A DNA stretch of 64,000 nucleotides, from positions 186,001-250,000 of the IMG/VR virus record IMGVR_UViG_3300017963_000188; one strand, given 5' to 3'. The position numbers and the translations under genes are program-made. Below, in pieces: positions 2,015 through 23,404 of the stretch. The notes below the pieces were generated by a model, which had not been told where the DNA came from, did no database searches, and saw only the letters and a list, made by a program, of their open reading frames with translations. Position 1 is the stretch's first letter; each line of letters opens with the position of its first letter.

Positions 2015-3328
2015 TTATCTTCCCCATGTACTAGCAAATCTCTTCTTGAAGGCTGAAGCACTCATATTTACGGCTGTAGTGCTAACTTCAATCTTCTTTG
2101 GAGTGTTCTTACGTGTCGGTTTATAACCATCGTTTCGTTTTTCAGGATTTATCCCAGCATGATCCACAGGGGTAAGATATTCAGGGTCATTATCCCCCAC
2201 GTCTTTTGGTAGAGGTTTGGATTTGGCTGTTGATGTAGCTTTAGAGGCTGGACGTATGTCAGTAGACATACTCTGAGCTTCTGTAGTGTAACCACGATGT
2301 AGCTTCTCTATAGTCAACAGAACCTCACATATTAACATGGAACGATCTAGAAACCTTAAAGATCTATTAAATGAAACCATGAATCTCTGAACCAATTCTA
2401 TATCAAACTGTCCCAAGATTGCAACTCCTTGGTTTAGATCAAAATAGTTGGGTACGATCAATCTTTGATGGAGATATTGTAGATGAACAAGATTCTCAAG
2501 GATGTTAGAGTATATGTCTTGAGGAGATAATTTGAACAACATCTCCTGGATCAAGGTGAGTGTTTTAGCCTTATCATCAGACAGTATAGATTCAATGAGA
2601 CCCAATATCTCAGTGGACCACCCAATACCTAGATAGTCCTTTACGTTCTGAGTCGAAATACCACCTATCTTACTCACTTGCTCCAAAGAACTGATAGCGT
2701 CCCTAACATGACCTTTACTATGGCTCACAATCCATTCTAAGGCTTCATGCTCGTACTCAAATTCTTCCTGCTTACAAATCAACTCCAATCGATCCGTAAT
2801 GACCTGTGAAGGTATCCTCTCTAACTGTAACAGCTCACATCTGGACCTTATAGCAGGACGCATTTTTCTGAGTTCTGTAGTACAGAAGATACCAATTAGT
2901 TTCCTATCCTCAAGAGGCTTTAGTAGAACATCTTGACTATCTTTACTCATACGGTGAGATTCATCAAACAGAATGATTTTCTTCCCACCAAAAAGATTGT
3001 AGGATAGATTATCGACCGTAGCACGAACCCAATCAATGGTACCATGACCAGCAGCATCTCTTTCTTCGAAATTGAGGTGGTCTTCATTCATGAAGTTTTT
3101 ACATGAATCACAGGTATTGCAAGGTTCATTTCCCTGACGGTTCTGACAAAGCATAGCTCTAGCAAAGATTCGAGCTAATGTTGTCTTACCACTCCCATGT
3201 GGTCCAGAAAAGACATATGATGTTTCCTGGTCTGTACCACCTTCCAACCTGGACTGTAGCACATTACGGATCTTTTCCTGGCCCAGCACATCACTGAACT
3301 GCAACGGACGATATTTTAGGTCAAGCAT
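2015..3328 (-). CDS. dnaX: DNA polymerase III gamma/tau clamp-loader ATPase
   Basis: KYRP..FSDVLGQ, Walker A GPHGSGKTT, Zn cluster C..PCNTCDSC, Walker B DESHRM, SRC motif, sensor-2 GHVRDA. Confidence 0.92.
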   Translation of the reverse strand: MLDLKYRPLQFSDVLGQEKIRNVLQSRLEGGTDQETSYVFSGPHGSGKTTLARIFARAMLCQNRQGNEPCNTCDSCKNFMNEDHLNFEERDAAGHGTIDWVRATVDNLSYNLFGGKKIILFDESHRMSKDSQDVLLKPLEDRKLIGIFCTTELRKMRPAIRSRCELLQLERIPSQVITDRLELICKQEEFEYEHEALEWIVSHSKGHVRDAISSLEQVSKIGGISTQNVKDYLGIGWSTEILGLIESILSDDKAKTLTLIQEMLFKLSPQDIYSNILENLVHLQYLHQRLIVPNYFDLNQGVAILGQFDIELVQRFMVSFNRSLRFLDRSMLICEVLLTIEKLHRGYTTEAQSMSTDIRPASKATSTAKSKPLPKDVGDNDPEYLTPVDHAGINPEKRNDGYKPTRKNTPKKIEVSTTAVNMSASAFKKRFASTWGR

Positions 3329-3846
3329 TATGCACTAGCCTCTACTAACTGAGGGGATGTGTTATTCCCTTTCTCTTTCTTGATATCAACACTTTGGTCT
3401 CCATCAACCTCATCAAGATCAAGAACTTTGACATTACGACCAAACTTCTTCAAGTCTTCATGCCAGAATCCATAGGTGCTGATCACCTCTGAGAATTCTT
3501 GGATGTCAGGATCTCTCATTTTGTAGATATACTCATTGGTTTCTTCATCAACATCTACAAAACAATAGCAAAGATAGTGATACAATGCTGCTTCTCTTTG
3601 ACGTGGATTCAGCTCTTGCCAACCATCAGCACCTAACTCAATGATGTAATGACAACCATCCAAAAAGAAATTCTGCATAGGAGAAGCTTTCTTTGTCTTA
3701 CCAAGAACCAACTTCCCTGCCTTCTTAGAGCATTTCTCTTTCATGACGTAGACAATCTTGGCATCAACTAACTCAGGGGCTCTCTTGGCAATGATCCCCT
3801 CTGCCATTTCCTTCACTTCCTCTGAGTACCAATACTCTGTAGCCAT
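3328..3846 (-). CDS. Phage putative metallopeptidase-like protein with degenerate active site
   Basis: Family-like layout (LGKTKK...YIIEL..D.WQEL...QREAALYH...DIQEF.EVI..YG), but the HExxH position reads HYLCY. Confidence 0.6.
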   Translation of the reverse strand: MATEYWYSEEVKEMAEGIIAKRAPELVDAKIVYVMKEKCSKKAGKLVLGKTKKASPMQNFFLDGCHYIIELGADGWQELNPRQREAALYHYLCYCFVDVDEETNEYIYKMRDPDIQEFSEVISTYGFWHEDLKKFGRNVKVLDLDEVDGDQSVDIKKEKGNNTSPQLVEASA

Positions 3847-3885
3847 AACTTATCTCCTTTGGTAAAAGGGTTTCCAGTCCCTCCA

Positions 3886-4572
3886 TTAAATATCATGGTA
3901 TGCTACCTGGTCAAGGATATAATTCTTCAGTTTTGTATCACCCCACTCATACCATGCCTCACCAATATCCTTGAACTTCGAGCTTAAAACTATACATTTG
4001 AAAGGTGATGACTTTGTACTAAAGTAGTTCCATGCTTTTTTCCTTATACTATCTGAAGATTTTTGTCCAGTTTTATCAGAATCAAAATATAGAAATACTT
4101 TATCAACAAACCTCTCTAAAAATCTATATTGTTGTGATGATAGATTTGCTGTGCTGACACACAAAGTATTAGCATAAATCCTTTGAAGAGGGAAAAAGTC
4201 AAAAGCTCCTTCAACTAAGAAGACACTTTTGGTTCTCCAAATCTCCTCAAGGCATCCTCTGGTTGTCCCAAAAAACCAAGGTCCTGGTGACTTAGCAACC
4301 CATTTGTAGTATTCTTTCTCTGCTACAGCTCTGGTGATAAATCCTGTTGGTGATTGGTCGAGACGTGTTAAAGGAAATAGCACATATCCAGTATTGACTC
4401 GTGGACCATCATAAAACACATTCCCATCTTTGGATATCTTCACAACCCTGGAACTCCAACCGACACGGAACTGTCTTATCTGCTCTTCAGACACTCCACG
4501 AGAAAGTAGAAAATCCACAGCCTCTGGATGCCTTTGCAGATTGGCTTGCCATATCTTTATAAATTTCTCCAT
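3886..4572 (-). CDS. DnaG-type primase catalytic/TOPRIM core without zinc-binding domain
   Basis: AVDFLLSRG...QFRVGW, FPL...GFITR, VEGAFD, YFDSDKTG, KDIGE motifs. Confidence 0.8.
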   Translation of the reverse strand: MEKFIKIWQANLQRHPEAVDFLLSRGVSEEQIRQFRVGWSSRVVKISKDGNVFYDGPRVNTGYVLFPLTRLDQSPTGFITRAVAEKEYYKWVAKSPGPWFFGTTRGCLEEIWRTKSVFLVEGAFDFFPLQRIYANTLCVSTANLSSQQYRFLERFVDKVFLYFDSDKTGQKSSDSIRKKAWNYFSTKSSPFKCIVLSSKFKDIGEAWYEWGDTKLKNYILDQVAYHDI

Positions 4573-5090
4573 TTCACAAGCCTTATCTGTTCCAATGGGT
4601 TTCGAAGCATATATGTAGCATATGCTTTATCCAGGTCCTTTCGAGAAATAATAGTGAAAAAACCTAACTCTACCGTTCCAGGCACGATCATTATACAATC
4701 ATTCAATTTATAATTGATTATCCCCACTCCTTCTAGAGCTAATTCTTCAAAGATTTGGTTTTTTCTGCTAAAGAACTGACCTATTATCCATCGAGGTTGT
4801 ATACCTATTTCAACATAATATTCCAATACATCTTCTAGATCATTATGGATTTCTAGAGTATCTATAAGGGAATCACTCACACGACTGAAAATATCTTCAT
4901 TAGGTTCTACTGGAAAAATACCGGTACGAAACTTATAAGGAGGTTCATTTGAAATTTTAGGTACACCAGTGCTTTTTGAGACAGCTATTGAAGATAAATC
5001 GAACCCTTCCCATTCCATCATTAATGGGACATGATCAGCAGCTCCCAATTCATAGTAGCTATCAACAAGGATTTTACTTAGAATTTTCAT
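4557..5090 (-). CDS. Hypothetical protein
   Basis: ORF in the operon. Probable start at MKILSKIL (5090), overlapping the upstream gene. Confidence 0.5.
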   Translation of the reverse strand: MKILSKILVDSYYELGAADHVPLMMEWEGFDLSSIAVSKSTGVPKISNEPPYKFRTGIFPVEPNEDIFSRVSDSLIDTLEIHNDLEDVLEYYVEIGIQPRWIIGQFFSRKNQIFEELALEGVGIINYKLNDCIMIVPGTVELGFFTIISRKDLDKAYATYMLRNPLEQIRLVKWRNL

Positions 5091-5703
5091 TCTTAGATCT
5101 CTTCTTAAACGAGAAAAATGCCTTGACTCGACCCCAAAACGGCAGTTTTCCTTTTTCATTAAGAATAGACCTTAAAAGAGATAGGTCATGATGATGTTTT
5201 TCAACATGTTTCCAAAACTGGTCTTCTATCTCTCCTTTAGAATACTTATTGAGAAAGGCAGGGCAATGGTCAGCATCACTGCTAATATCACAGATAGTGA
5301 TTTCATTCTTCTCAAATGATAACTTACAAAGCCCTGTGTATTTGATGAACCCATGTAAATCATACTTCTCTGCATGAGACAGGACTAGGTAAAATATATT
5401 GGAATCACTTTCTTCAAAATCAATGAGATGCTTTTTCCGTATCCAAATCCTACTATCATTGATCAGGAATTGAACCCTATCTTTATCTTCGTCTACCACA
5501 CATTGGTATTCAATTCTGACTCGATTGATTCTATTGTAGTTTGGATTAGGCTCACCATCAATGATGGGTTCAATATCAAGTGGATGCTGTAGATTGAACC
5601 TACAATTCCAAGGTTCTTGAGTAGATTTCTCCTTGATATAAGCATAGAAGTACCTTTTTAAAAGATTCTGATACATCTCATATATTTCTTCTTTTGTTTT
5701 CAC
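5074..5703 (-). CDS. Hypothetical protein, possibly Cys/His metal-binding
   Basis: 209-aa ORF tightly packed in the operon, with CRFNLQH and C...C...HCP motifs. Confidence 0.55.
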   Translation of the reverse strand: MKTKEEIYEMYQNLLKRYFYAYIKEKSTQEPWNCRFNLQHPLDIEPIIDGEPNPNYNRINRVRIEYQCVVDEDKDRVQFLINDSRIWIRKKHLIDFEESDSNIFYLVLSHAEKYDLHGFIKYTGLCKLSFEKNEITICDISSDADHCPAFLNKYSKGEIEDQFWKHVEKHHHDLSLLRSILNEKGKLPFWGRVKAFFSFKKRSKNENSK

Positions 5704-5704
5704 A

Positions 5705-6325
5705 TCATGGTCCTTTTATCTCTTTCAAAACTAGTTTTGAGCCATCCAAATCTCCAGCATAAGCTGTGTCTGCAAAGCTCAGGAACTTTGGTTGATGAGT
5801 TACAAGCAATACATCAAATTGAGTCTTTTTACATAATGACTTCAGGAAAGATCCTGCATTATCAATGTATTCTTCCGAAACATTCCCTAAAGATTCATCG
5901 AGAGCTAGGAAGGGATATAGCTTCAGCTTCATTGAAGCTATGAACCGGAAAAGAAGAGACACTATATTGGCTACACCACCCCCAAAAGAATCAAGGACAT
6001 CTCCTTCGATCCCCTTCATCCCATCAGTAAGTAAAAAATCGATGTTGACCTTCCCACGTTTGATGCTTGAATCAATTTTTAAGGAAAGGTCTTGGTCCTC
6101 GAAAATGGCCTGTAAGCCCTCTGTGATGATAGCCCTGATACTTTCCTTGTCTTCGTGGATTAAAGCTTGCAGAATGGTTTTTATGGCCTCTGAAGCCTGT
6201 TCTAGGACAGACATCTGGTGCTCTATCTTCTTAATCTCATCTTCCAATGAAGATTCGTCTCGAAGATACTTGGATCGCACCCCTTCTAGTCGGGATATTT
6301 TGTCTCCAAGATCACCTAACATCAT
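5705..6325 (-). CDS. SbcC/Rad50-like ABC ATPase, C-terminal half
   Basis: Short coiled coil, then signature SFGGG, Walker B/D-loop LALDESLGNV and H-switch LLVTH. No Walker A. Confidence 0.85.
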   Translation of the reverse strand: MMLGDLGDKISRLEGVRSKYLRDESSLEDEIKKIEHQMSVLEQASEAIKTILQALIHEDKESIRAIITEGLQAIFEDQDLSLKIDSSIKRGKVNIDFLLTDGMKGIEGDVLDSFGGGVANIVSLLFRFIASMKLKLYPFLALDESLGNVSEEYIDNAGSFLKSLCKKTQFDVLLVTHQPKFLSFADTAYAGDLDGSKLVLKEIKGP

Positions 6326-7485
6326 TCATTCCAATAGGACAGTATATTCATGACTCGACAGGAAACCTTTTCCTCTTCTTCTCCCTCTTCTGGTTCCCCA
6401 AGGGAGATGTCCAAAGATCCAATGATCTTAAACTTCTTATCCTCAGGGTTGATGCCCATTAGGATTGTATCTTTAGGGAAAGCTCTCAACACACTGATGA
6501 GGTTTGAAAACTGAACCTTGACTGTCAATGCTTCTTCAGGCATGTCTTGGGGAGAAACAGACAAACGAGACTGGAAATTTGGAGGTCGAACCATCTCCAA
6601 AAATCCTTCAGGATGGATGGTGATATCCATCTCGTCAAACAGTTGTGAACCTTTTGTCTTCAGTAGCTGTAGGATATTTGAAAACTTCTTGTTCTCGATG
6701 TTGAATGTGATGGGAGGTTCATCTTCAAGTGAAAGCTCTTCTTCCAATTCCTTTTGAGCCTTCACATTGAAAGCATAGACAAGCACAGATCCGTTTTCAC
6801 TCTCCAGGGCATAACCATTGCCAAATTGAAGAGCCTTGATCTTCTGACCCTTGTATTGGGTCAGGAAAGAAAGGATAGGAGCCATATCATCCATACCAAA
6901 ACTAAGAGCTGGAAATCCCTGAGATGATTCAAAGACCCCAATCTTGATCTCATCCATATAAATGAGCTTATCTCCTGAAACAAGAACTCTAGGAGAGAAA
7001 ATTTCCTTGTTAGAAAAACTCTTGATGTACTTAACCCCTTCAACAAGGACATCAGCATGAATCTCTCCGAGGTCTTGAGTGTCCTTCAAGAGTTTTTCAA
7101 TTGCTGGGACTTTGACTGTCAAGAATGGGTATTTCTGGTCTGTGAAATTCTCTTTCCCAGAATCAAGCCACATACCTCTGATTCGAAGGTTCTTTTCAAG
7201 GTACTGAATCTTGAGTTCCTCAGAAGGAAGAGTGCTGACAAAGTTCTCAACACCTGTCCCAAGTATAATGACAGCATTCTCTTCTGGTATTTCACCATCT
7301 GTGGATTTTATGCTGAAATATGCTCTGGTAGCAAAACGTCCTGAACAAGAGTACAGAACACCTTTAGTAGGGTTGAGCACTTCTAACCTAATAGACTGTG
7401 ATGCTGTATTGTAGCTGGAAAATTCCAGTGTCGAAAGAGCACGTAGAAATTCTTGCCTGTCTACTGTAAGTTCCATTGAAGCCAT
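6322..7485 (-). CDS. dnaN: Divergent DNA polymerase III beta sliding clamp-like protein
   Basis: 387 aa, N-terminus MELTVDRQEFLRAL, clamp-like three-domain spacing, context of dnaX/holA/holB. Confidence 0.6.
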   Translation of the reverse strand: MASMELTVDRQEFLRALSTLEFSSYNTASQSIRLEVLNPTKGVLYSCSGRFATRAYFSIKSTDGEIPEENAVIILGTGVENFVSTLPSEELKIQYLEKNLRIRGMWLDSGKENFTDQKYPFLTVKVPAIEKLLKDTQDLGEIHADVLVEGVKYIKSFSNKEIFSPRVLVSGDKLIYMDEIKIGVFESSQGFPALSFGMDDMAPILSFLTQYKGQKIKALQFGNGYALESENGSVLVYAFNVKAQKELEEELSLEDEPPITFNIENKKFSNILQLLKTKGSQLFDEMDITIHPEGFLEMVRPPNFQSRLSVSPQDMPEEALTVKVQFSNLISVLRAFPKDTILMGINPEDKKFKIIGSLDISLGEPEEGEEEEKVSCRVMNILSYWNE

Positions 7486-7497
7486 TTGTATCTCCTT

Positions 7498-7791
7498 TTA
7501 TAGACCTAGATCATCAAACTGATCATCGAATTGAGATAAGCTCTCTTCAAGAGCTTTCATTTTCTCTTCAAAAGCATTGACCTGATCTTCTAGCTCTTGT
7601 TTCTTTTCATCCAGAGTAGAGCTTAGCTTTTTAGGGTCAAGACCTTTAGCTTTTATCTCTTCAACAATTTCTTTTAACTGTTGTTTCTCTGCATCTAAAC
7701 GACCCTTAATCTTGTCCCGTTTTGAGACAAGTTCGGCTCGTTTCTCTTTCAATTTTGACCATCTTCGGGCCAACGCTTCTACATCGGACAT
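7498..7791 (-). CDS. Small coiled-coil protein
   Basis: 97 aa, heptad-rich and K/E-rich, with GGAGG SD. Lies between the two Rad50 halves. Confidence 0.75.
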   Translation of the reverse strand: MSDVEALARRWSKLKEKRAELVSKRDKIKGRLDAEKQQLKEIVEEIKAKGLDPKKLSSTLDEKKQELEDQVNAFEEKMKALEESLSQFDDQFDDLGL

Positions 7792-7826
7792 GATTTCCTC
7801 CAGGTCATATTACCAAGAGTGTATTT

Positions 7827-8666
7827 TTATTCGTCATCATCAAGACCTAACTCCACAAATCCTGAAGTACCTTCTGGAAGGATAGATTTGTTCTTGTTGG
7901 TCTTATCTGCTTTAAATTTGCATTCCCCAACATAAGGGCAAAACTTACAAGCCTTACTACTTGGGGTTGCCTTGAATTGACGCTTCTTTATCTTCTGCAT
8001 TACATCGATAATTTCTGCTTTCAATTCCTTCAGAGTATCGATAGTGAATTCTACTTCCAATAGAGGATCTTCTGGAAATCTATAGAACCAATACCATAAA
8101 GAGTTTGGCATTTTTCTATGCAAGAGGTAATAAGACAAAGCATACCAAAAGAGCTGTCTATGATCTAGATACCTGTCTTTATACTTGCTCCCTTTACCAT
8201 CAAATATCCTGATCTCACCATCACCTTTAAACACGAAATCAATTCGACCACCAATTTGATCAGCTTTGGTAATGTATGCATAGGTATTGACTTCAGATTT
8301 TGCATATGGAGCTAACAGTTTATAGTCTCTTACCGTATCGATACCATGATCTACAGCTACAATACATTCATCTATAATTAGCTGTTTCCCACCCTCATGT
8401 TCACCCCAAAAGATGTTCTTTTTAGCTACGATTTCGGCAAATACTTTGGGGACTTTATCTTTCAGGATAGTTCTGGCTTCTTTCCCTTTCCTCCAAATCT
8501 GGTCATTGTAAAACATTTCAAACATCTTCTGAACTACTGTACCATAAACAGTATTATACTCATCTTGCATGGTAATAGGTTTGTCCCTATTTATATTCTG
8601 TCTCAGATGCTTCAAAGGGCATTCAACATAATTTTTGAATGCATAAAATGTAAGGGCTCTAGGCAT
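7827..8666 (-). CDS. PD-(D/E)XK nuclease, AddB/RecB/Cas4-like with probable Fe-S staple
   Basis: ECP near the N-terminus, GGRIDF...IFDGKG, QLFWYA, C-terminal CKFCPY..EC. Confidence 0.85.
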   Translation of the reverse strand: MPRALTFYAFKNYVECPLKHLRQNINRDKPITMQDEYNTVYGTVVQKMFEMFYNDQIWRKGKEARTILKDKVPKVFAEIVAKKNIFWGEHEGGKQLIIDECIVAVDHGIDTVRDYKLLAPYAKSEVNTYAYITKADQIGGRIDFVFKGDGEIRIFDGKGSKYKDRYLDHRQLFWYALSYYLLHRKMPNSLWYWFYRFPEDPLLEVEFTIDTLKELKAEIIDVMQKIKKRQFKATPSSKACKFCPYVGECKFKADKTNKNKSILPEGTSGFVELGLDDDE

Positions 8667-9612
8667 TTTCAGCAGCCTCCAAGTAATGGTATATAGTGTC
8701 TTTCACCTCTTGAGCCAGCCCTAAAGATGAAATACTCTGTGTCAGTTTATCTTTTGGGTCCTCTGTAGATACTTTGATGAGATTCTCAATGAAATCTTCA
8801 ATCTTACGAGTCTCTTGTTGGACCTTTTCTTTACGTTCAAAATCAAAAATTTCTTTTGCTTCTCTCACCAATAAATCAATAGGAGTAACTTGGACATTCA
8901 CATCACCATCATCCACAGTGATCTCTATGAAACCTACACGAGGGGTGCGAGTAATGTCATCATATGTCAAAGCCCCCCTAGAGATAGCCCCAAGATTTAT
9001 GAAATGCTTACCTTCAACTTCTTGGATACCCTGGTCTTTATGTATATGACCGAGAACCCAAATGTCAGGGTCTAGTTCAGCAAGTTTCTTATAACTATAG
9101 AACTTCTCTCCTGGATATAATGGGAGATCCGCAACTGAACCATGGAACACTGCGATGAGTATCTTCTCATCACCTTTCTTGCATCTACTGAGCAATTCTT
9201 CATCCACATCTACACGATAATCAATACCAATTATACGAACATCACCAATTGTGATATCTTGCAGCCTATTGAATGTCTTGGTCTTGAACAAAACCCCTAG
9301 TGGTTGCTTATCAATAGTATCAACATTGCTATACATCACATCATGATTGCCAATAATAGCATACACTGGAACCTTGTACTGATTATGTAAAAGAGCCACA
9401 TCACCAGTCAGTTCATGACTGTTCTTTGTAGGTGCTTTCACATGATAGAAATCACCAGCATCAAGAATAGCATCACATTCATGGTCTACTGCTAATTTGT
9501 AAATCTGATCTAACTTATTAAGTATTGCTTCTTTGTAGTCATCGATCCTAGAGACAGGAGGTCTGTCAGAAAGATGGCAATCAGATCTAGTGATGAACCG
9601 ATATTTCTTCAT
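8659..9612 (-). CDS. sbcD: SbcD/Mre11-like metallophosphoesterase nuclease
   Basis: SDCH, AGDFYH, GNHD, HG and LGHIH calcineurin-like motifs. Adjacent to the Rad50 N-half. Confidence 0.88.
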   Translation of the reverse strand: MKKYRFITRSDCHLSDRPPVSRIDDYKEAILNKLDQIYKLAVDHECDAILDAGDFYHVKAPTKNSHELTGDVALLHNQYKVPVYAIIGNHDVMYSNVDTIDKQPLGVLFKTKTFNRLQDITIGDVRIIGIDYRVDVDEELLSRCKKGDEKILIAVFHGSVADLPLYPGEKFYSYKKLAELDPDIWVLGHIHKDQGIQEVEGKHFINLGAISRGALTYDDITRTPRVGFIEITVDDGDVNVQVTPIDLLVREAKEIFDFERKEKVQQETRKIEDFIENLIKVSTEDPKDKLTQSISSLGLAQEVKDTIYHYLEAAENA

Positions 9613-10775
9613 GCTAACGAAGTCTCACACAAGGGGCAGACCTTAAGCTGAGCTTTCACGTCTGCTATTTCATTATCTAACTCTCTCAATTCAGATTCTA
9701 TCTCTGAAGACTCCTTCTCCAAAGCCACAAATTGACGTTTGATAGTCTTTAAAGACTCAATCTTGCCCTGCATCCAAACCACAGAGTCAAAATCTAGTTC
9801 TAAGACTTTGGGTATTTGGATAGACTCTACTCCTTCAAGTCTCGACACTGAATCCAAAGCTGGAATTAGTTGTCGAGACAGGCTTTCAAGTTCACGAGCT
9901 TCTTCCAAATCAGCATCTAAGTTTTCAGTTGGTATCTCGATTTGTGCTAAGTCACTCTCCATCATTGATCTGATTTCAGGTTGAAATTTCTTACACCTAT
10001 CATGAAAATCCTGTATTTCATAGATTTCCACAATGAGTGAATTCAAATCTTCTTCTGGGACAACTATGGTATCAATTTTGGTCAGAGACTTCACCCTAAT
10101 ACCACATCTTTTTAGCTTACTTTCGAGTCCCAAAATCCTTGTCAGTTCTACCTTCAATTCCTCTAGATCAGCTCCCTCAGATCTCAACACATCATATCGA
10201 GCCCTTATGTCAGGGACTTCTTTGAGAGTCTCAATACCTTCTTGGACCCTTTGGAGGTCAGCTTTCCGAGTCTTAAGGGTACTCTTCAGATTACGTTGAT
10301 CTTTTTCGATCAATCTTTGAGCACCATTCAAAATATTAATCCGAGAGATATCAAATAGGATATCAGCACAGGCTCCACCCGTTTCATTCACCAGAAACAA
10401 TGGGTTGAATTGATCAGCTATTTGTGGGGAGAGATCTTTGTTACCTGTAGTGATGACTCGGAATCCAGCATCTGCCAATTCAGATGGCACTTCAAATCCA
10501 ACATTATTGTAGGATTCATTACCTATGGTATATTGGTTCCCTTTCCCTTTTTCCCAGGAAAGAAAGAAACCATTGGGATCTTGAAGAGTGACAGTACAAG
10601 TTTTTTCACCCTCTCGAATATAGTAGCTTCCCTTTGAGTTCCTCAACGCACCTTTGATAGCACGTATTATAGCACTCTTACCAATATTTGTTTTCCCAAC
10701 AATTACTGTGAATCCTTTAATCCTAAAGGATACATCTTTAATTGATTGGAAATTCTTGATCCCAATATCTATCAT
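9609..10775 (-). CDS. SbcC/Rad50-like ABC ATPase, N-terminal half ending in a CxxC hook
   Basis: IKNFQSI, Walker A GKTNIGKS, Q-loop ADQF, long helical arm, terminal CPLC. No signature or Walker B. Confidence 0.85.
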   Translation of the reverse strand: MIDIGIKNFQSIKDVSFRIKGFTVIVGKTNIGKSAIIRAIKGALRNSKGSYYIREGEKTCTVTLQDPNGFFLSWEKGKGNQYTIGNESYNNVGFEVPSELADAGFRVITTGNKDLSPQIADQFNPLFLVNETGGACADILFDISRINILNGAQRLIEKDQRNLKSTLKTRKADLQRVQEGIETLKEVPDIRARYDVLRSEGADLEELKVELTRILGLESKLKRCGIRVKSLTKIDTIVVPEEDLNSLIVEIYEIQDFHDRCKKFQPEIRSMMESDLAQIEIPTENLDADLEEARELESLSRQLIPALDSVSRLEGVESIQIPKVLELDFDSVVWMQGKIESLKTIKRQFVALEKESSEIESELRELDNEIADVKAQLKVCPLCETSLA

Positions 10776-12013
10776 AGAGTCTCTTCTTTCACCTCACCAT
10801 CTTCATCAACAACAATTTCTTCAGTATCAACATTTTCCACTTGCTCTTCTTCTTCAAGAATTATATCCCCTTCGTCACTCTCTACGGCACCCTCAGTTTC
10901 AACATTACTCTCAAAGGATATTTTTTCAAGCACATCACTCTTAATAGCTTCATACACCACAGGATTTTCTCTGAACAGAGTTTGTACCTTCTCTTTTCCC
11001 TGTACCTTGAACCCAACCTTTTTATCATCTTCTTTATATGACAACCAGGAACTATTTTTTGTGATGACTTTACGGAAAATGGCAATATCCAAAATAGTCC
11101 TGATATTGTCAATACCCTTGCCAAACCTGATGAAGATTTCACCAGTATCCCCTTGTTTACTATCCAATTTATTTTTGACACAGGTAACTTTGGTATATGT
11201 ACCAATAGGTTTTTTCTTTTTCTGGCCTGTCAATGAATCTTTGATTTCCAAAACTTCCTGTGCCCGTTTCTGTAGTTTTAACCTGATAGTAGAATAGAAC
11301 TTCAAAGCATTTCCACCACTGGTTGTTTCATCAGGTCTAGTATCATATTTGGAGGTTTTGATCACAGATCGTATCTGATTCACAAAGATCACAGATGTAT
11401 CTTTCCCTCGTAACCAATTAACCAGTTTACCAAGGAACTGAGACATCTTTATGGCACGAAGACCAATTTGCTCATCCTTGCTAGCCTCTCCCTCCAGCAC
11501 CTTTCTAGGCACCATAGCAGAAACAGAGTCTATGATTATGGCATCAAGATTATGCTCTACCCATGTATTGATAATTTCAAAACCCTCTTCCATACAGAAT
11601 GGTACCCAGATATCAATCAGATCATTATCATAATCAACACCAAGGGCTTGAGCATAACCATCATGTAAAGCATTCTCAAAATCAAGGAACCCTACTACAC
11701 CACCAGCCTGTTGTGCTTGTGCTGCAACAGCTAATGCCAATGTTGTCTTACCACTTGATTCAGGACCGTATACCTCAATGATACGACCACGAGGAACACC
11801 AGGGCATATGGATAGTCCAGATGAAGGAATGATCGTACCTCCAATCAGATGGTTGACTATGATGGACCCTGTTGATACATGGGGGAATTGTTCAGTTGGA
11901 TTAGGGTCTTTTCTATTCTTGAAATCCACCTCTTTATGTTTTCTCAATGCTTTTCTAGCTTCTATCAGAGCATTAGTTTTTTCACTTTTTGTTTTTGCTT
12001 TTGCTTTTGGCAT
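10772..12013 (-). CDS. recA: Recombinase RecA
   Basis: STGS, PRGRIIEVYGPESSGKTT, DFENALH, IIIDSVSAM, FVNQIR, SGGNALKFY. Confidence 0.95.
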   Translation of the reverse strand: MPKAKAKTKSEKTNALIEARKALRKHKEVDFKNRKDPNPTEQFPHVSTGSIIVNHLIGGTIIPSSGLSICPGVPRGRIIEVYGPESSGKTTLALAVAAQAQQAGGVVGFLDFENALHDGYAQALGVDYDNDLIDIWVPFCMEEGFEIINTWVEHNLDAIIIDSVSAMVPRKVLEGEASKDEQIGLRAIKMSQFLGKLVNWLRGKDTSVIFVNQIRSVIKTSKYDTRPDETTSGGNALKFYSTIRLKLQKRAQEVLEIKDSLTGQKKKKPIGTYTKVTCVKNKLDSKQGDTGEIFIRFGKGIDNIRTILDIAIFRKVITKNSSWLSYKEDDKKVGFKVQGKEKVQTLFRENPVVYEAIKSDVLEKISFESNVETEGAVESDEGDIILEEEEQVENVDTEEIVVDEDGEVKEETL

Positions 12014-12634
12014 TCAATTTTCTCCAAACAGAAAAAATCTGTCATTCTCACGGTAAGCCATCCCACGTTTTTTCAACTTCCCTTTTACCTTCTTCACACC
12101 AAGAAATATCCACTTTTCCTTTGGGGTAAGTTCTTCCTCAGGGGTGGTCCCATTAAAATAAAGAATGAATCTATAGGTAAGATAGGCTACATTAAAAGCA
12201 TCAGCAGTGTCAGAGTTCCAACCCCCTTTTACATCAGAAGCTTTTTTTGCAGCATCTATCATATCTACTTTGAACATCTTGCCCTTCTCTCTACCCAATA
12301 TTTCTTTGGCTCTACTTTTCACTGTCAACGGGTCCCAAAAGTATACGTTCTTTTTTGCTTTGTGAAGGGCTTCCATAGCAAATAAAAACAATCCATATAG
12401 ACCTTCTGACCAAAGCTCTCCAAATGGAGGACTTTCAATACCTACTGCGGTTAGATCTTCAGTATTGATGCAGAGATCATAGATTGACTCACGAAGATAG
12501 ACGTAGCGATCTATGAACAACATCTTCGAGTCGGTCTGGAATTTTCCTCGATTCACAACTATAGGTGATGCCTGGTCATCTATCAAACACCACCCATAGT
12601 TGGTCATCGAGGGGTCAAGACCAAGGACCCTCAT
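12014..12634 (-). CDS. ruvC: RuvC-like Holliday junction resolvase
   Basis: MRVLGLDPSMTNYGW, IESP, PLTVK and DTADA RNase H-fold motifs. Confidence 0.8.
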   Translation of the reverse strand: MRVLGLDPSMTNYGWCLIDDQASPIVVNRGKFQTDSKMLFIDRYVYLRESIYDLCINTEDLTAVGIESPPFGELWSEGLYGLFLFAMEALHKAKKNVYFWDPLTVKSRAKEILGREKGKMFKVDMIDAAKKASDVKGGWNSDTADAFNVAYLTYRFILYFNGTTPEEELTPKEKWIFLGVKKVKGKLKKRGMAYRENDRFFLFGEN

Positions 12635-12638
12635 GTCA

Positions 12639-13319
12639 TTAAAGGTCCGCTAGAAGATCAGAATAGTCCGAAGAATCGGCACCACCTTCTTCAACCCCAT
12701 CAACGTCGTCACCCAAAGCCTCTTTGAGTTCTTCTGTGGTCATCTTCCGACCCAAAAGATTTGGCAGGGACTCTTCCAGCTTCTTAACCTTAGCAAGTAT
12801 GTCATCTCTGATCTCATCCTTCTTCATCCACAGAGCTTCACCTGCTGGTACAATATCCAACTTCTGATACTGTGTGTCCTTACAAGTCACTTCCAGATCC
12901 GTTTGATGGAGAGGGTTGGACTTATTACGACGCTTCAGGTCGTTATACTTGTCCCCATTGATGACCCAGGGCCATACCTGATACTTACGGAAATTGGTCT
13001 TGTCGATATTACCATCTCGATCAGTAATATACTGAACAATGATAGTAGCAATTCGACTTTTTGGTGCTCCCATACGTTCGCAGCAGAACCCATTAGTACA
13101 GATCACGTAGCCTACCGAGGGATGGTAGTGAGCATTCACGACAAGAAAGGAAATCTTGTCCATCAAATACTTCCCTTCCTCGTCTTTTCTACGCAGAGCA
13201 ATTGCAATGCGATCTGTAGCATTTTTGATCGTACCTTTATAGGTATCGATACGACTGGTCTTGACAACATCATCACCGTCATCAAAACTAACTTCATTGA
13301 TCCAACTTGGCTGTGACAT
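12639..13319 (-). CDS. Single-stranded DNA-binding protein, T4 gp32-like
   Basis: HYH...CTNGFCC metal motif, DLEVT...QYQKLDI strand, acidic C-terminal tail. Next to recA/ruvC. Confidence 0.65.
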   Translation of the reverse strand: MSQPSWINEVSFDDGDDVVKTSRIDTYKGTIKNATDRIAIALRRKDEEGKYLMDKISFLVVNAHYHPSVGYVICTNGFCCERMGAPKSRIATIIVQYITDRDGNIDKTNFRKYQVWPWVINGDKYNDLKRRNKSNPLHQTDLEVTCKDTQYQKLDIVPAGEALWMKKDEIRDDILAKVKKLEESLPNLLGRKMTTEELKEALGDDVDGVEEGGADSSDYSDLLADL

Positions 13320-13331
13320 GGCTTACCTCCA

Positions 13332-14129
13332 TTATAGGTCTTTTAAAATGTCCATCAAATCTTGGTCTTCACCTTTGACTTCTGGCTCTTTTGTTTCTGG
13401 TTCTTCTACTTCAATGGTCTTCAAGTCATTTTCTTTCTTCCCTTCTTCCTCAGAGTTTTCTCCCGTGTCAGGAGAAGAGTTATCAGACTCTGCATCAAAG
13501 TCATCTAAAAAACTGATGTCCTCAGATGCTGACTTTTCCTCATCGTCATCGGTCTCTATAGAAGGTGGATCGTCAGGTATACCATCTAATAAAATTGAAG
13601 GGTCTTTGTTGACATCTTCTTTTTCTTTTTTTTCTTTCCCACCTTCTGAACCAAGATACCCTTCCAAAGAAATCTCTGTAGTCATTAACTGCTTAGCAGT
13701 GCGGATATCGGCATTGGCATCTTTCAGATCCCGAATCTTGACCTTTACAACTTCTTCCAAGGCTTTAAGGTCTCTTTCTTGTTCTTCAAGGTCTGCAATT
13801 TCTTTGAGATTGTCTATTAACTGTTGGTTAGCTGAAGCTACTCTATCTTTGTACGAAGTACCTCTACGTACAACTTCATCAGTAGCTATGAGCTGATCAA
13901 GATCAATTTTATATTCAGCACGAGAGGCTTCTAATTTCCTGGTCACTTCCCAAAGTGACCGCTTTATAGACTGAAGATAACCACTGACTTCATTCAAGTA
14001 GGTACGACACTCGACAAGCTTCTCACGAAGATAAACAGGACCAAGAACAGTGATATCACCATCCTCTAAAGTAATGACCATCTTAGGTATACGGTCAAAT
14101 ACTTGTTTTATCCAAGCCTCATTTATCAT
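13332..14129 (-). CDS. Coiled-coil protein with acidic tail, possible UvsY-like recombination mediator
   Basis: Helical heptads then a D/E-rich tail, adjacent to SSB. Probable start MINEAW (14129). Function inferred from context only. Confidence 0.4.
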   Translation of the reverse strand: MINEAWIKQVFDRIPKMVITLEDGDITVLGPVYLREKLVECRTYLNEVSGYLQSIKRSLWEVTRKLEASRAEYKIDLDQLIATDEVVRRGTSYKDRVASANQQLIDNLKEIADLEEQERDLKALEEVVKVKIRDLKDANADIRTAKQLMTTEISLEGYLGSEGGKEKKEKEDVNKDPSILLDGIPDDPPSIETDDDEEKSASEDISFLDDFDAESDNSSPDTGENSEEEGKKENDLKTIEVEEPETKEPEVKGEDQDLMDILKDL

Positions 14130-14442
14130 CTTCCCTCTTGTCCTCCTCTTCAAGTTTCTTACTCAACTGTTCAATCAACATGTCGAACACACCTGAAGTA
14201 CGATCTTTCTTGAGAGTGTAAGAATCACTTGTGATCATGTTACGGGAAAGTAAGGTAGCAAAGCTCATAACAGAGAGCCTCTTGCACAACTTCATGTACT
14301 CAACTTCAGCTTCTTCAAGCGACCAGTCTTGACCTTCAGGCACAGCGGTAAAAGATAAAAAGATATCTTTACCCCAGGATCTTTTCTCTTGGTCCCCAAA
14401 TGAGGTCATAGCTGCTGTTATTGACTTTATCTTCATTTTCAC
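14119..14442 (-). CDS. Hypothetical protein
   Basis: 107-aa ORF in the operon. Confidence 0.55.
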   Translation of the reverse strand: MKMKIKSITAAMTSFGDQEKRSWGKDIFLSFTAVPEGQDWSLEEAEVEYMKLCKRLSVMSFATLLSRNMITSDSYTLKKDRTSGVFDMLIEQLSKKLEEEDKREDDK

Positions 14443-22256: not shown

Positions 22257-22439
22257 CAAAAAAGATCTCATACAATTCCAGTAACTTACAACACTGGGTC
22301 TCATAACTCCCTGAACATACAACTAAAAAATTTCCCGCTTCCTACCCATTTTTTTTCATTTCTTCTCCTCACCATATGTTGCCATACAGATCTTTTCGTG
22401 TACTCCCCCTTCTTCATTTATATATACTCTCTTTTCTTT

Positions 22440-22645
22440 TCCTCTTGTAGGTAGAAGTTAAGATCAGATCTATTTATATATATTATTATGGAGATCCAAA
22501 AATTGGAGGTAAGGAAAGTTACCTGTGTTGCAGGTAGGGAGATTTTGGGATCTGAAAAGTTACCATACATGTATTGTAAGTGTAGAGATGAGATCCAAAA
22601 AATTGAGACCTGGATTTGTGGGTGGGGGGATGTTGATTGATCTGT
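22440..22645. other. Candidate replication origin (AT-rich core, GATC cluster, direct repeat)
   Basis: At the coding-strand switch. AGATCAGATCTATTTATATATATTATTAT core and near-repeat GAGATCC(A5/A6)TTG at 22491 and 22590. Confidence 0.35.
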
Positions 22646-22664
22646 TTGTATTGTTAGTGTATAT

Positions 22665-23039
22665 ATGAGTGAAGAGGAGGATGATATGTCGCTTAGTGGT
22701 AATTTCCCGGAAAATGGTACCAGTGTCTCAACTGAAGAGGTGGAGATTTGGAGGGAGGATATCCCTGAAGGCAATTATTGGATTCAGGAGGGGAGGAATT
22801 ATCTGAGGACTCTGACCAAGGATGATGTTATATGGATGTTGCAGAGGATTCCAAAAGCTAGGAAAGATTATTTGGAAGCTGTGAATCCAGAAAGGGAGGA
22901 TTATGTACGTCTTGCTAATGTGCCTCTGGTCAACCACTATGATCCTGACAAAATGAATAAGGGTCTTAACAGGACTCCACAGTCTATTGAATTCCTCTGG
23001 AAGGAGTGCAAAGGTGTATGGCCCAGACACAGACATTGA
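22665..23039 (+). CDS. Hypothetical protein
   Basis: First rightward ORF. GGAGG precedes its second Met. Confidence 0.55.
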   Translation: MSEEEDDMSLSGNFPENGTSVSTEEVEIWREDIPEGNYWIQEGRNYLRTLTKDDVIWMLQRIPKARKDYLEAVNPEREDYVRLANVPLVNHYDPDKMNKGLNRTPQSIEFLWKECKGVWPRHRH

Positions 23040-23404
23040 TTCTTATATGTGTGGGTGGGATTTTGTTTTTTTGTCTTGCCTGTATAGTTGTATTCGTATA
23101 TGGGTTTAAGAGAGGATTTCGATATTTTTATCGGTGTGTGAATGAAGAGAAGGACATAAAGATATATCTCTCGTTGTCAGAGATACTTGGAGATGTTATG
23201 AGGATAAAAAACCGTAAAGAGCCAGATAAGGTGAAGCAACAAAGGTTTTGGAAGGATTTGTGGGGGAAAGCATGTGACCGTGCTAGAACAGTAGAAGATT
23301 CAAGATTAGCTGTGTTGGAACGTTATAGTAAGGAGCCAGAGAAAATCCTACGGAAATTTAATATCATCTCTCAGGCCGATATAGATAGGGAATTTGGTCA
23401 ATGA
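23006..23404 (+). CDS. Hypothetical membrane-anchored protein
   Basis: N-terminal hydrophobic helix LILICVGGILFFCLACIVVFVY. Confidence 0.55.
   Translation: MQRCMAQTQTLILICVGGILFFCLACIVVFVYGFKRGFRYFYRCVNEEKDIKIYLSLSEILGDVMRIKNRKEPDKVKQQRFWKDLWGKACDRARTVEDSRLAVLERYSKEPEKILRKFNIISQADIDREFGQ

What the first reader, a model, noticed from the sequence alone, without database searches (positions are those of the whole stretch)
5705..10775. Rad50/SbcC split into two genes at the zinc hook, with other genes between the halves
Seen: 9609..10775 has Walker A, Q-loop and about 230 residues of arm, ending at CPLC. 5705..6325 has only a short coil plus the signature, Walker B, D-loop and H-switch. Between them lie sbcD, a PD-(D/E)XK nuclease, a 97-aa coil protein and the clamp. 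The N-half arm carries about three Pro-punctuated repeats (IDTIVVPEEDL, LAQIEIPTENL, VESIQIPKVLEL). Knowledge: canonical Rad50/SbcC and T4 gp46 are single chains whose coil folds back on itself. Inference: a heteromeric Mre11-Rad50 complex with an asymmetric, segmented arm.
Basis: partly seen in the sequence, partly recalled or inferred. Interest (0 to 1): 0.7.

Follow-up and report, generated by a model that had tools for sequence, protein, structure and literature searches.

The report
Naturally split phage Rad50 ATPase
This giant phage encodes its DNA-break-processing ATPase Rad50/SbcC as two separate proteins cut exactly at the zinc hook, plus a small conserved helical protein. The same layout recurs in many phage genomes, yet I found no paper describing it.

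Summary
ORF 9609-10775 (-) is a Rad50 N-half: Walker A, Q-loop and a 245-residue helical arm ending in CPLC. ORF 5705-6325 (-) is a Rad50 C-half: a 72-residue helix, then signature SFGGG, Walker B and H-loop. SbcD, a Cas4-like nuclease, a 97-aa helical protein and a DnaN-type clamp lie between them.

It is not a misassembly. Two independent public runs carry identical contigs, and the architecture is conserved.
- All 66 distinct N-halves end 3-20 residues after a CxxC.
- A stand-alone C-half lies within 10 kb in 67 of 80 related viral loci, and elsewhere in the genome in 5 of 5 others tested.
- The C-half family has 152 clusters at E<=1e-30.
- Cultured Bacillus, Tunturiibacter and Microbacterium phages share the split.
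- The minimal operon is N-half, SbcD, coil, C-half.

Each half models as, and best matches, the complementary chain of engineered two-chain Rad50 heads. The ~90-aa coil protein always travels with one of the halves. The N-arm carries ~41-residue Pro-punctuated modules whose number varies.

Physical assembly is inferred, not shown: my one complex prediction gave no answer. No paper describing a split Rad50 was found. Verdict: new variant of a known kind.

The parts
9609..10775 (-). Rad50/SbcC N-half (388 aa): ABC lobe I with Walker A and Q-loop, then a segmented helical arm ending in the CPLC zinc-hook motif
   Evidence: AAA_15 6.9e-11, phrog_16465/1499/77. AF2 pLDDT 79.9. Foldseek best hits are Rad50 N-terminal chains 1f2u_C and 9a9j_A. 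More than 150 homologous clusters of about 390 aa.
10674..10697 (-). Walker A, GKTNIGKS
   Evidence: Translation. G27, G32, K33 and S34 are invariant in 36 homologues.
9792..10079 (-). Arm region with three Pro-punctuated loops (IDTIVVP, LAQIEIP, VESIQIP), part of ~41-residue tandem modules
9627..9638 (-). CPLC, the zinc-hook motif placed at the C-terminus of the N-half
   Evidence: 66 of 66 distinct N-halves have a CxxC 3-20 residues from the end. Weak matches to Rad50_zn_hook (Pfam 0.078) and to the hook structure 1l8d_A (0.0033).
8659..9612 (-). SbcD/Mre11 nuclease (317 aa). Its start overlaps the N-half stop by 4 nt.
   Evidence: Metallophos 3.2e-13, phrog_100, Mre11_Halo 1.5e-10. Motifs DxH, GD, GNHD, H and GHxH are conserved.
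7827..8666 (-). PD-(D/E)XK Cas4-like nuclease. Present in the jumbo-phage version of the operon and absent from the minimal one.
   Evidence: PDDEXK_1 1.3e-18, cas4 2.4e-8. Found in 60 of 83 loci.
7498..7791 (-). 97-aa two-helix protein with a conserved A-G-Y/L-D-P-K turn (KAKGLDPK at 7630-7653). Proposed extra subunit of the split Rad50.
   Evidence: Alignment of 44 homologues. Adjacent to the C-half block or to the N-half in every genome examined in which it was detected. No named family.
6322..7485 (-). DnaN-type beta sliding clamp (387 aa), inserted between the coil gene and the C-half. Its stop overlaps the C-half start.
5705..6325 (-). Rad50/SbcC C-half (206 aa): a 72-residue helix, then ABC lobe II with signature SFGGG (5975-5989), Walker B DE (5894-5899) and H-loop H177 (5795-5797)
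   Evidence: phrog_15167 4.6e-21. Profile against PDB Rad50 C-terminal chains 1.3e-10. AF2 pLDDT 95.6. Foldseek best hits 5h66_B, 1ii8_B, 1f2t_B, 3qkr_B.
5074..5703 (-). Conserved Cys-rich protein of unknown function (209 aa) immediately downstream of the C-half. Membership of the complex is unknown.
   Evidence: Found in 57 loci. The median gap to the C-half is -4 nt. Four nearly invariant Cys. No family or fold match.
10772..12013 (-). RecA/UvsX-like recombinase, immediately upstream. Its stop overlaps the N-half start.
   Evidence: RecA 5.2e-55, phrog_97. Upstream of the N-half in 78 of 83 loci.
12014..12634 (-). RuvC-like Holliday junction resolvase, the first gene of the conserved block
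   Evidence: phrog_159 7.2e-15. Found in 68 loci.

Best explanation
The two ORFs are the N- and C-terminal halves of the phage's only Rad50/SbcC ATPase. They are encoded as separate polypeptides cut just after the zinc-hook CxxC.

Inferred mechanism:
- The 72-residue N-terminal helix of the C-half pairs antiparallel with the first long helix of the N-half, roughly residues 150-232. This brings lobe I (Walker A, Q-loop) and lobe II (signature, Walker B, H-loop) together into one nucleotide-binding domain, as co-expressed Rad50 fragments do.
- Two such heterodimers, together with an SbcD/Mre11 dimer, form the end-processing nuclease. This is the T4 gp46/47 analogue. It feeds the adjacent RecA/UvsX and RuvC for recombination-dependent replication and repair.
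- Beyond the paired stem the N-half arm continues alone. It consists of a variable number of ~41-residue helix-plus-Pro-loop modules, then a constant ~50-residue helix bearing the terminal CxxC. The CxxC presumably dimerises through zinc.
- The conserved ~90-aa two-helix protein is a further subunit. It most likely packs on the unpartnered part of the N-arm, near the hook or at the stem junction.

Shown: the split, the motif complementarity, the folds of each half, conservation, co-occurrence and synteny.
Inferred: trans-assembly, zinc binding, the coil protein's binding site and the biological role.
For: ORFs and motifs:
- ORFs and motifs are as described.
- Each half lacks the other's motifs, and the motifs present are invariant or nearly invariant across homologues.

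Identity of each half:
- C-half profile against Rad50 C-terminal chains 3qkr_B and 1ii8_B: 1.3e-10.
- N-half model best matches Rad50 N-terminal chains.
- C-half model (pLDDT 95.6) best matches the C-terminal chains of two-chain SMC/Rad50 heads.
- SbcD with an intact active site is translationally coupled to the N-half.
- There is no other Rad50/SbcC in the 358-kb genome.

Conservation and co-occurrence:
- C-half within 10 kb of the N-half in 67 of 80 viral loci, and elsewhere in the genome in 5 of 5 of the rest.
- All 66 N-halves end at a CxxC.
- C-half family: 3,928 clusters at E<=1e-3 and 152 at <=1e-30. The top 150 are all full-profile matches; nearly all are about 190-240 aa, with a few shorter fragments and a few with longer tails.
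- Cultured phages show the same split: 0305phi8-36, phBC6A51, vB_BboS-125 and Tunturi_5.

The coil gene stays beside the C-half block in 5 of 5 dispersed genomes and beside the N-half in Tunturi_5.

Two independent runs carry identical contigs.

Precedent: an engineered human Rad50 split at the hook, with a dimeriser on the N-half, assembles and works (PMC3642328). The solved Rad50 catalytic domains are themselves two-chain constructs.
Against: - There is no direct evidence of N-C binding. The single complex prediction scored only the coil protein and returned no answer (score 0.02).
- Single-sequence matches to Rad50 families fall far below the curated cut-offs.
- T4 gp46 is barely detectable by profile comparison.
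- The D-loop aspartate is replaced by serine.
- The tertiary arrangement of the N-arm is unresolved (pTM 0.36).
- N-arm length varies from 306 to 491 residues, while the coil and C-half lengths stay constant (r = 0.09 and 0.25). A simple one-to-one three-piece antiparallel arm therefore cannot hold over the arm's full length.
Confidence: 0.85

Rival explanations
1. Assembly or annotation artefact. On this reading a single Rad50 gene was broken by a chimeric contig, a frameshift or a mis-join.
For: Logan contigs of both runs break at about 6229-6256, inside the C-half ORF.
Against: - That break is not at either gene boundary of the split.
- One 21.5-kb contig of run X2 covers 6236-10900 without a single difference. 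The X1 contigs overlap across the remaining joins.
- Two further IMG/VR contigs from other metagenomes carry the identical arrangement (L004 and L005).
- More than 60 distinct genomes at 25-70% identity share the same termini: N ends after CxxC and C starts with a helix.
Confidence: 0.01
2. Decayed remnants. On this reading the two ORFs are non-functional pieces of a Rad50 gene disrupted by inserted genes.
For: Four genes lie between the halves in this window. Phage genes are often fractured by mobile elements; in vB_BboS-125 an AP2/HNH-type gene sits next to the N-half.
Against: - All catalytic motifs are invariant or nearly invariant across very divergent homologues.
- The family is old and large.
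- This pair is the only Rad50 in a genome class in which SbcCD is practically universal (PMC7824862).
- The genes are translationally coupled in a tight operon.
Confidence: 0.02
3. The two proteins are not partners. On this reading the N-half is an independent AAA_15/OLD-like or Lamassu-like ATPase piece, and the C-half belongs to a different system, for example a clamp-associated factor.
For: - The N-terminal 50 residues match Old, GajA and AriA models.
- The C-half travels with the clamp and not with the N-half in dispersed genomes.
- In Tunturi_5 and several jumbo phages the halves lie 15-220 kb apart.
Against: - Neither protein has a complete ABC motif set.
- Exactly one of each is present per genome tested.
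- In the minimal loci they sit in one four-gene operon with SbcD.
- Their folds are the two complementary lobes of a single Rad50 head.
- The OLD/GajA matches cover only the P-loop strand-helix.
Confidence: 0.05
4. The halves are joined after translation or during it, by a split intein, ribosomal bypass or trans-splicing, so the mature protein is a single chain.
For: Phages are known to use split inteins and translational bypassing (established knowledge; T4 gene 60).
Against: - The N-half ends 3-20 residues after the CxxC, which leaves no room for an intein fragment.
- The C-half begins directly with its coiled-coil helix.
- In some genomes 3.3 kb to 220 kb, including functional genes, separate the halves.
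Confidence: 0.01

Closest known systems
Canonical Rad50/SbcC with Mre11/SbcD (P. furiosus Rad50-Mre11, E. coli SbcCD, T4 gp46/gp47)
   Same: - ABC head built from an N-terminal Walker A/Q-loop lobe and a C-terminal signature/Walker B/H-loop lobe.
- A helical arm emerges from the head, with a CxxC motif at the far end of the ascending arm.
- An adjacent calcineurin-type nuclease with all Mre11 motifs.
- The neighbourhood holds a recombinase and, as in T4, the sliding clamp.
   Different: - Two polypeptides instead of one.
- The descending arm is cut to 72 residues.
- The CxxC is a chain terminus, not the apex of a hairpin.
- The distal arm is made of ~41-residue Pro-punctuated modules of variable number.
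- An extra conserved ~90-aa helical protein.
- The D-loop Asp is replaced by Ser.
- Scores fall below the curated family cut-offs.
Engineered split Rad50: two-chain catalytic-domain constructs (PDB 1F2T/1F2U, 1II8, 3QKR, 9A9J), and the human Rad50 cut at the hook with FKBP on the N-half (PMC3642328)
   Same: - N and C fragments expressed as separate chains assemble into a working head.
- In the human construct the dimerisation module sits at the C-terminus of the N-half, exactly as the CxxC does here.
   Different: Those are laboratory constructs. In the human construct both halves keep a full-length coil. Here the split is natural, ancient and asymmetric.
Mre11-Rad50 fusion proteins (Mimivirus R555 and others; Yoshida et al. 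2011, PMC3175470)
   Same: Bacillus phage 0305phi8-36 ORF008 is listed there as a fusion. It belongs to the same lineage as the window's genes: SbcD fused to a Rad50 N-half that ends in CPTC.
   Different: That paper noted that one P-loop NTPase segment 'was not observed' in the Bacillus phage. It did not identify the separate C-half (ORF005) two genes downstream, or the coil protein (ORF007). In the window SbcD is not fused.
Phage genes in pieces (for example the fragmented nrdA of Aeromonas phage Aeh1, PMC3045599; T4 topoisomerase gp39/gp60, from my own knowledge)
   Same: An essential enzyme encoded as separate polypeptides that reassemble.
   Different: Those splits are recent and tied to homing endonuclease insertion. 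This one is shared by phages of Bacillota, Actinomycetota and Acidobacteriota hosts and by many uncultured jumbo phages. It also has a dedicated extra subunit.
SMC-like defence ATPases (Lamassu LmuB; OLD/GajA/AriA)
   Same: Weak profile matches. On one 611-position LmuB model the N-half maps to 8-384, the coil to 350-441 and the C-half to 417-597, which is colinear.
   Different: - The E-values are only 1e-4 to 1e-7, and the arm parts are driven by coiled-coil composition.
- There is no Toprim or LmuA-type effector.
- The partner here is SbcD, inside a recombination operon.

Membership tests
Rad50/SbcC ABC ATPase | Walker A (P-loop) in the N-terminal lobe | tested here: met
   GKTNIGKS at 10674-10697. 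G27, G32, K33 and S34 are invariant in 36 homologues.
Rad50/SbcC ABC ATPase | Q-loop glutamine in the N-terminal lobe | tested here: inconclusive
   Q122 in IADQF-PLFL is invariant and lies where a Q-loop is expected. That stretch of the model has low confidence (pLDDT 51-59), and no residue-level structural alignment was available.
Rad50/SbcC ABC ATPase | Signature motif, Walker B and H-loop in the C-terminal lobe | tested here: met
   SFGGG, LALDE and VTH. G115, G116, D143, E144 and H177 are invariant or nearly so in 61 homologues. They align to the same motifs of P. furiosus Rad50.
Rad50/SbcC ABC ATPase | D-loop aspartate after Walker B | tested here: not met
   The aligned position is a conserved Ser (A/N-V-S), where P. 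furiosus has Y-L-D.
Rad50/SbcC ABC ATPase | Both lobes in one chain, joined by a long antiparallel coiled-coil hairpin | tested here: not met
   Two ORFs lie 3.3 kb apart. The arm is 245 residues on the N-half and 72 on the C-half.
Rad50/SbcC ABC ATPase | CxxC zinc hook at the tip of the arm | tested here: inconclusive
   A CxxC is present at the end of the ascending arm in 66 of 66 homologues. Matches to hook models are weak (Pfam 0.078; 1l8d_A 0.0033). Zinc binding and dimerisation cannot be tested with these tools.
Rad50/SbcC ABC ATPase | Cognate Mre11/SbcD nuclease partner | tested here: met
   SbcD has all phosphoesterase motifs and a C-terminal helical region. It overlaps the N-half stop and is present in 70 of 83 loci. 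Physical binding was not tested.
Rad50/SbcC ABC ATPase | Score above the curated family thresholds (Pfam SMC_N, AAA_23, SbcC_Walker_B; NCBIfam Rad50) | tested here: not met
   - Only AAA_15 passes its cut-off for the protein scanned whole (42.8 against 32.1 bits). AAA_23 scores 20.7 bits there (cut-off 27). In the genome scan its local match over the N-terminal strand-helix (profile positions 2-68) reaches 29.2 bits.
- SMC_N scores 16-17 bits against a cut-off of 40.
- NCBIfam Rad50 scores 15-27 bits against cut-offs of 700-850.
- SbcC_Walker_B has no hit in the genome.
Rad50/SbcC ABC ATPase | Fold of each lobe equals Rad50 lobe I or lobe II | tested here: met
   - N-half model against 1f2u_C: E 6.5e-5, TMt 0.48.
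- C-half model against 1ii8_B, 9a9j_B and 1f2u_B: E about 1e-7 to 3e-6, TMt 0.55-0.76.
Beta sliding clamp (DnaN), for ORF 6322-7485 | Full-length similarity to three-domain beta clamps | tested here: met
   The profile of 38 syntenic homologues matches solved beta clamps at 1e-25 over positions 1-354. The window's protein matches a profile built without it at 3.7e-21.

The most novel reading that the evidence does not exclude
This would be a distinct architectural class of Mre11-Rad50 machine, in which the arm is not a continuous antiparallel hairpin.
- A short heterodimeric stem, formed by the N-half helix and the C-half helix, carries a distal rod made only of N-half chains.
- That rod is built from a variable number of ~41-residue modules and pairs in parallel with the second N-half.
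- The rod is closed by an intra-complex zinc site formed from two chain-terminal CxxC motifs.
- The conserved ~90-aa helical hairpin protein replaces the missing descending coil at the hook or at the stem junction.

The ring would then have an extra, non-covalent gate at the apex, and arm length could be tuned one module at a time.
Probability: 0.25. Interest if true: 0.8.

Novelty: new variant of a known kind. Interest (0 to 1): 0.62.

Why it matters
**Open question.** Why Rad50's long coiled coil and hook matter, and whether the covalent continuity of the hairpin is needed, is still debated. So far it has been probed with engineered truncations and hook replacements.

**What this lineage offers.**
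- Nature has done the experiment. A large and old phage lineage runs its only Rad50 as two chains cut at the hook.
- The descending arm is drastically shortened.
- Arm length varies by single ~41-residue modules.
- A dedicated small helical protein accompanies the halves.

**Experimental systems.** Several members are in cultured phages with tractable hosts, such as Bacillus cereus/thuringiensis phages and Tunturiibacter phage Tunturi_5. The architecture can therefore be tested directly by co-purification, cryo-EM and genetics.

**Annotation.** The N-half is currently labelled 'exonuclease' or 'SbcC'. The C-half is labelled 'ATPase' or 'chromosome segregation ATPase'. The coil protein is 'hypothetical'. 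The 0305phi8-36 'fusion lacking a P-loop segment' is explained by the separate ORF005.

Tried and rejected
1. **Complex prediction.** I ran N-half + C-half + SbcD + coil(1-87) with the coil as the scored partner. The result was no answer (ipSAE 0.02, controls not run). It is not evidence either way. It used the only job, so N-C pairing and N-arm homodimerisation could not be predicted.

2. **T4 gp46 comparison.** Profile comparison with T4 gp46 aligned only the P-loop strand-helix (Prob 63%). The C-half found nothing meaningful. T4 is too divergent to serve as the reference; archaeal Rad50 is closer.

3. **LRR hit.** The best sequence hit of the N-half profile in the PDB was a leucine-rich-repeat protein (4u08_A, 4.7e-12) over the arm. 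I rejected it as a periodic-leucine artefact, because AlphaFold predicts confident helices there (pLDDT 86-94). The tertiary packing of the modules remains unknown.

4. **Rosetta-stone fusions.** The longer C-half relatives (P0148, P0237, P0276, P0161) have low-complexity read-through tails and no second domain.

5. **Coil protein and downstream Cys-rich protein.** Searches against PDB, Pfam, NCBIfam, PADLOC and the ESM Atlas gave only generic coiled-coil matches for the coil, and nothing for the Cys-rich protein.

6. **Promoter and terminator scan.** Counts over 4400-14400 were no higher than in shuffled sequence.

7. **Second AAA_23 hit in the genome.** The hit at G000:C1:91647-91748 is a 261-aa compact ABC ATPase without an arm. 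It is not a second Rad50.

8. **Literature.** Exact phrases for a split or bipartite Rad50/SbcC found no paper. Jumbo-phage overviews treat SbcC as a single protein. The searched library is not complete.

Full report
**Where the window lies.** The window is bases 186001-250000 of a 358,038-bp IMG/VR phage record that CheckV rates complete, that is, a jumbo phage. The region of the finding is a run of tightly packed, mostly overlapping genes on the minus strand. In order:
- RuvC-like resolvase, 12014-12634.
- RecA/UvsX, 10772-12013.
- Rad50 N-half, 9609-10775.
- SbcD, 8659-9612.
- PD-(D/E)XK nuclease, 7827-8666.
- A 97-aa helical protein, 7498-7791.
- A 387-aa protein, 6322-7485.
- Rad50 C-half, 5705-6325.
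- A 209-aa Cys-rich protein, 5074-5703.

**Observation.**
- The N-half has Walker A GKTNIGKS, an invariant Gln in IADQFNPLFL, a long helical region, and CPLC five residues before the stop.
- The C-half has one long helix, then SFGGG, LALDE and VTH.
- One correction: the D-loop aspartate is a conserved serine in this family.
- SbcD has every Mre11 phosphoesterase motif.
- The nuclease is PDDEXK_1/Cas4-like.
- The 'clamp' has no Pfam hit by itself. It matches the profile of the ORFs at the same position in related phages at 3.7e-21, and that profile matches solved DnaN beta clamps at 1e-25 over their full length.
- The Pro-punctuated repeats are real. Two of the prolines are nearly invariant in 36 homologues. 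Across 66 distinct N-halves the h-x-h-P motifs sit 40-43 residues apart in 44 of 71 spacings, at twice the density of shuffled arms.

**What the halves are.**
- Single-sequence hits are weak: AAA_15 6.9e-11 for the N-half, and SMC_N 0.005 and phrog_15167 'ATPase' 4.6e-21 for the C-half.
- A profile of 61 C-halves finds the C-terminal chains of P. furiosus Rad50 first (3qkr_B 1.3e-10, 1ii8_B, 1f2t_B). It aligns them end to end, with the motifs matching.
- The AlphaFold model of the C-half is very confident (pLDDT 95.6, pTM 0.79): helix 3-74, then an ABC lobe II. Its best structural matches are the C-terminal chains of two-chain SMC and Rad50 heads.
- The N-half model (pLDDT 79.9) has lobe I, then helices 133-184, 187-232, 244-273, 287-311 and 329-377. 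Its best matches are the N-terminal chains of the same Rad50 entries.
- The two ORFs are therefore the two complementary pieces of one Rad50 head. Neither has a complete ATPase motif set.
- The genome holds no other Rad50/SbcC. The only other AAA_23 hit is a compact 261-aa ABC ATPase without an arm.

**Not an artefact.**
- Two runs from different studies, a 2018 sediment and a 2021 seawater metagenome, contain contigs identical to the window over 5500-10900.
- One contig spans 6236-10900 without a difference.
- The only contig break, at 6229-6256, is inside the C-half ORF and not at a boundary of the split.
- Two further IMG/VR contigs from other samples carry the identical arrangement.

**Distribution.**
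- The N-half family has more than 150 clusters at 90% identity, 294-482 aa long, nearly all covering the whole query. They lie on contigs of up to about 497 kb.
- The C-half profile finds 3,928 clusters at 50% identity with E<=1e-3, 2,238 at <=1e-10 and 152 at <=1e-30. The best 150 are all full-profile matches; nearly all are about 190-240 aa, with a few shorter fragments and a few with longer tails.
- I fetched 80 viral loci through the N-half and scanned their ORFs with iterated profiles.
- A stand-alone C-half lies within the fetched 10 kb in 67 of the 80. The order RuvC, RecA, N-half, SbcD, PD-(D/E)XK, coil, [~390-aa ORF], C-half, Cys-rich protein holds in 53 of the loci scanned.
- In a more distant group (L070, L072, L074, L077, L083) the operon is simply RecA, N-half, SbcD, coil, C-half, and the genes are mostly contiguous or overlapping. 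The nuclease and the clamp are therefore additions of the jumbo clade.
- In five genomes where the C-half was not near the N-half, each has exactly one stand-alone C-half 15-220 kb away. It is always in the block coil, clamp, C-half, Cys-rich protein.
- All 66 distinct N-halves end 3-20 residues after a CxxC, mostly CPTC or CPLC.

**Cultured phages with the split.**
- Bacillus phage 0305phi8-36: ORF008 is an SbcD-N-half fusion ending in CPTC, ORF007 is the coil protein and ORF005 is the C-half.
- Prophage phBC6A51: BC1852 'SbcC' ends in CPLC, BC1854 is the coil, BC1855 is annotated 'chromosome segregation ATPases', and BC1857 is SbcD.
- vB_BboS-125: gp32, gp34 and gp35.
- Tunturiibacter phage Tunturi_5: gp181 (N-half) and gp180 (coil) sit beside UvsX and RuvC. 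The C-half, gp14, is more than 100 kb away.
- Microbacterium phage Magritte: gp155 (N-half) and gp2 (C-half). Here the N-half has lost the CxxC, and no coil protein was detected in the flanks.
- Sources.

**Arm anatomy.**
- The C-half contributes 72 helical residues. The first long helix of the N-half is about 100 residues and ends at the first Pro loop, so a stem of roughly 70-80 paired residues is plausible.
- Beyond it, the window's N-half has helices of 30, 25 and 49 residues separated by loops that carry the I-x-I-P motifs.
- Across the family the N-half ranges from 306 to 491 residues. In the alignment the longer members carry extra ~41-residue modules. Coil (~90 aa) and C-half (~200-240 aa) lengths do not follow it (r = 0.09 and 0.25).
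- A strict one-to-one antiparallel arm assembled from three pieces is therefore excluded over the full length. The modules must pack on themselves, on the second N-half or on something else.
- I could not resolve this.

**The 97-aa protein.**
- It belongs to a family of 84-106-aa proteins: helix, conserved A-G-Y-D-P-K-x-L turn, helix. The acidic tail of the window's copy is not conserved.
- The ESM Atlas holds at least 100 clusters of look-alikes, all unannotated and mostly viral. Pfam, NCBIfam, PADLOC and PDB give only generic coiled-coil matches.
- Its gene is next to the C-half (or to the clamp plus C-half) in nearly all loci, and next to the N-half in Tunturi_5. It is present even in the four-gene minimal operons and in small Bacillus siphophages.
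- This is good genomic evidence that it belongs with the split Rad50. Where it binds is an inference.
- The complex prediction with it as partner gave no answer.

**Mechanism (inferred).**
- The halves assemble in trans through the stem and form a composite ATP-binding head.
- Two heads engage on ATP, and SbcD supplies the nuclease.
- The complex processes DNA ends for the neighbouring RecA/UvsX and RuvC, as T4 gp46/47 does. In T4 the clamp gene also lies next to gene 46.
- Precedents show that this is feasible. The solved Rad50 catalytic domains are co-expressed N and C fragments. A human Rad50 cut at the hook, carrying a dimeriser on the N-half with the C-half as a separate polypeptide, assembles and regains function when dimerised (PMC3642328).

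**Comparison with the literature.**
- Yoshida et al. 2011 (PMC3175470) listed 0305phi8-36 ORF008 among the Mre11/Rad50 fusions. They remarked that one P-loop segment 'was not observed', but did not connect it with ORF005.
- Overviews of jumbo phages and the SPN3US work treat SbcC as one protein.
- Phrase searches for a split or bipartite Rad50/SbcC returned nothing, and broader searches found no description.
- The library does not cover subscription journals, so 'undescribed' is provisional.

**Verdict.** This is a real, conserved, widespread and apparently unrecognised architectural variant of Rad50/SbcC. I file it as working like Rad50. I do not file it as a canonical member, because two defining features were tested and not met: both lobes on a single chain joined by a hairpin arm, and scores above the curated family thresholds. 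The D-loop aspartate is also not met. Novelty: new variant of a known kind. Interest 0.62.

Noticed in passing
window 5074-5703 (-): A 209-aa protein with four nearly invariant cysteines and a conserved Trp sits immediately after the C-half (median gap -4 nt). It is found in 57 related loci and in all five dispersed coil-clamp-C-half blocks. No Pfam, PDB or Atlas match. It could be a further partner of the complex, or a metal-binding factor.
   Followed up: partly
window 6322-7485 (-): A very divergent DnaN-type beta clamp, 12-17% identical to its syntenic homologues and with no Pfam hit by itself. It is embedded between the coil gene and the C-half throughout the jumbo clade, and its stop overlaps the C-half start. 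T4 also keeps its clamp next to gene 46.
   Followed up: yes
window 7827-8666 (-): A Cas4-like PD-(D/E)XK nuclease with a C...CxxCx5C pattern typical of Fe-S Cas4/AddB nuclease domains, encoded directly after SbcD. It may be the 5'-3' resection partner, by analogy with NurA in archaeal operons. It is absent from the minimal operons.
   Followed up: partly
L007, L075 (RecA ORFs of 812 and 807 aa); L017 (SbcD ORF of 700 aa): In some related phages the RecA or SbcD ORFs are about twice the usual length. This could reflect inteins or fusions.
   Followed up: no
L085:7424-8404 (+), Bacillus phage vB_BboS-125 NC_048735.1, about 22423-23403: A clear SbcD ORF (E 2.5e-48 to the SbcD profile) lies in a stretch with no annotated CDS in the public record.
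   Followed up: no
window 6229-6256: The Logan contigs of both public runs break at the same place inside the C-half ORF. This suggests a graph branch, for example a strain variant or a short repeat. The IMG/VR assemblies run through it.
   Followed up: no
G000:C1:91081-91866 (-), outside the window (L086:934-1719): A 261-aa compact ABC-type ATPase (GLNGSGKST, VYLLDEPD, SVHH) with a Lys-rich tail. It is the only other AAA_23 hit in the genome and is not a Rad50.
   Followed up: partly
window 2015-4572 (-): A DnaX-like clamp-loader subunit (437 aa, GPHGSGKTT) and other apparent replication genes lie just downstream of the block. This is my own reading of the translations; no family scan was run on them.
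   Followed up: no
window about 22000: Cumulative GC skew reaches its minimum near 22 kb, where gene orientation appears to switch from the minus to the plus strand.
   Followed up: no
L094:3501-4553, Microbacterium phage Magritte gp155: This N-half homologue lacks the terminal CxxC, and no coil-family protein was detected within 3.5 kb of either half. That is a single case consistent with the coil protein being tied to the hook.
   Followed up: partly
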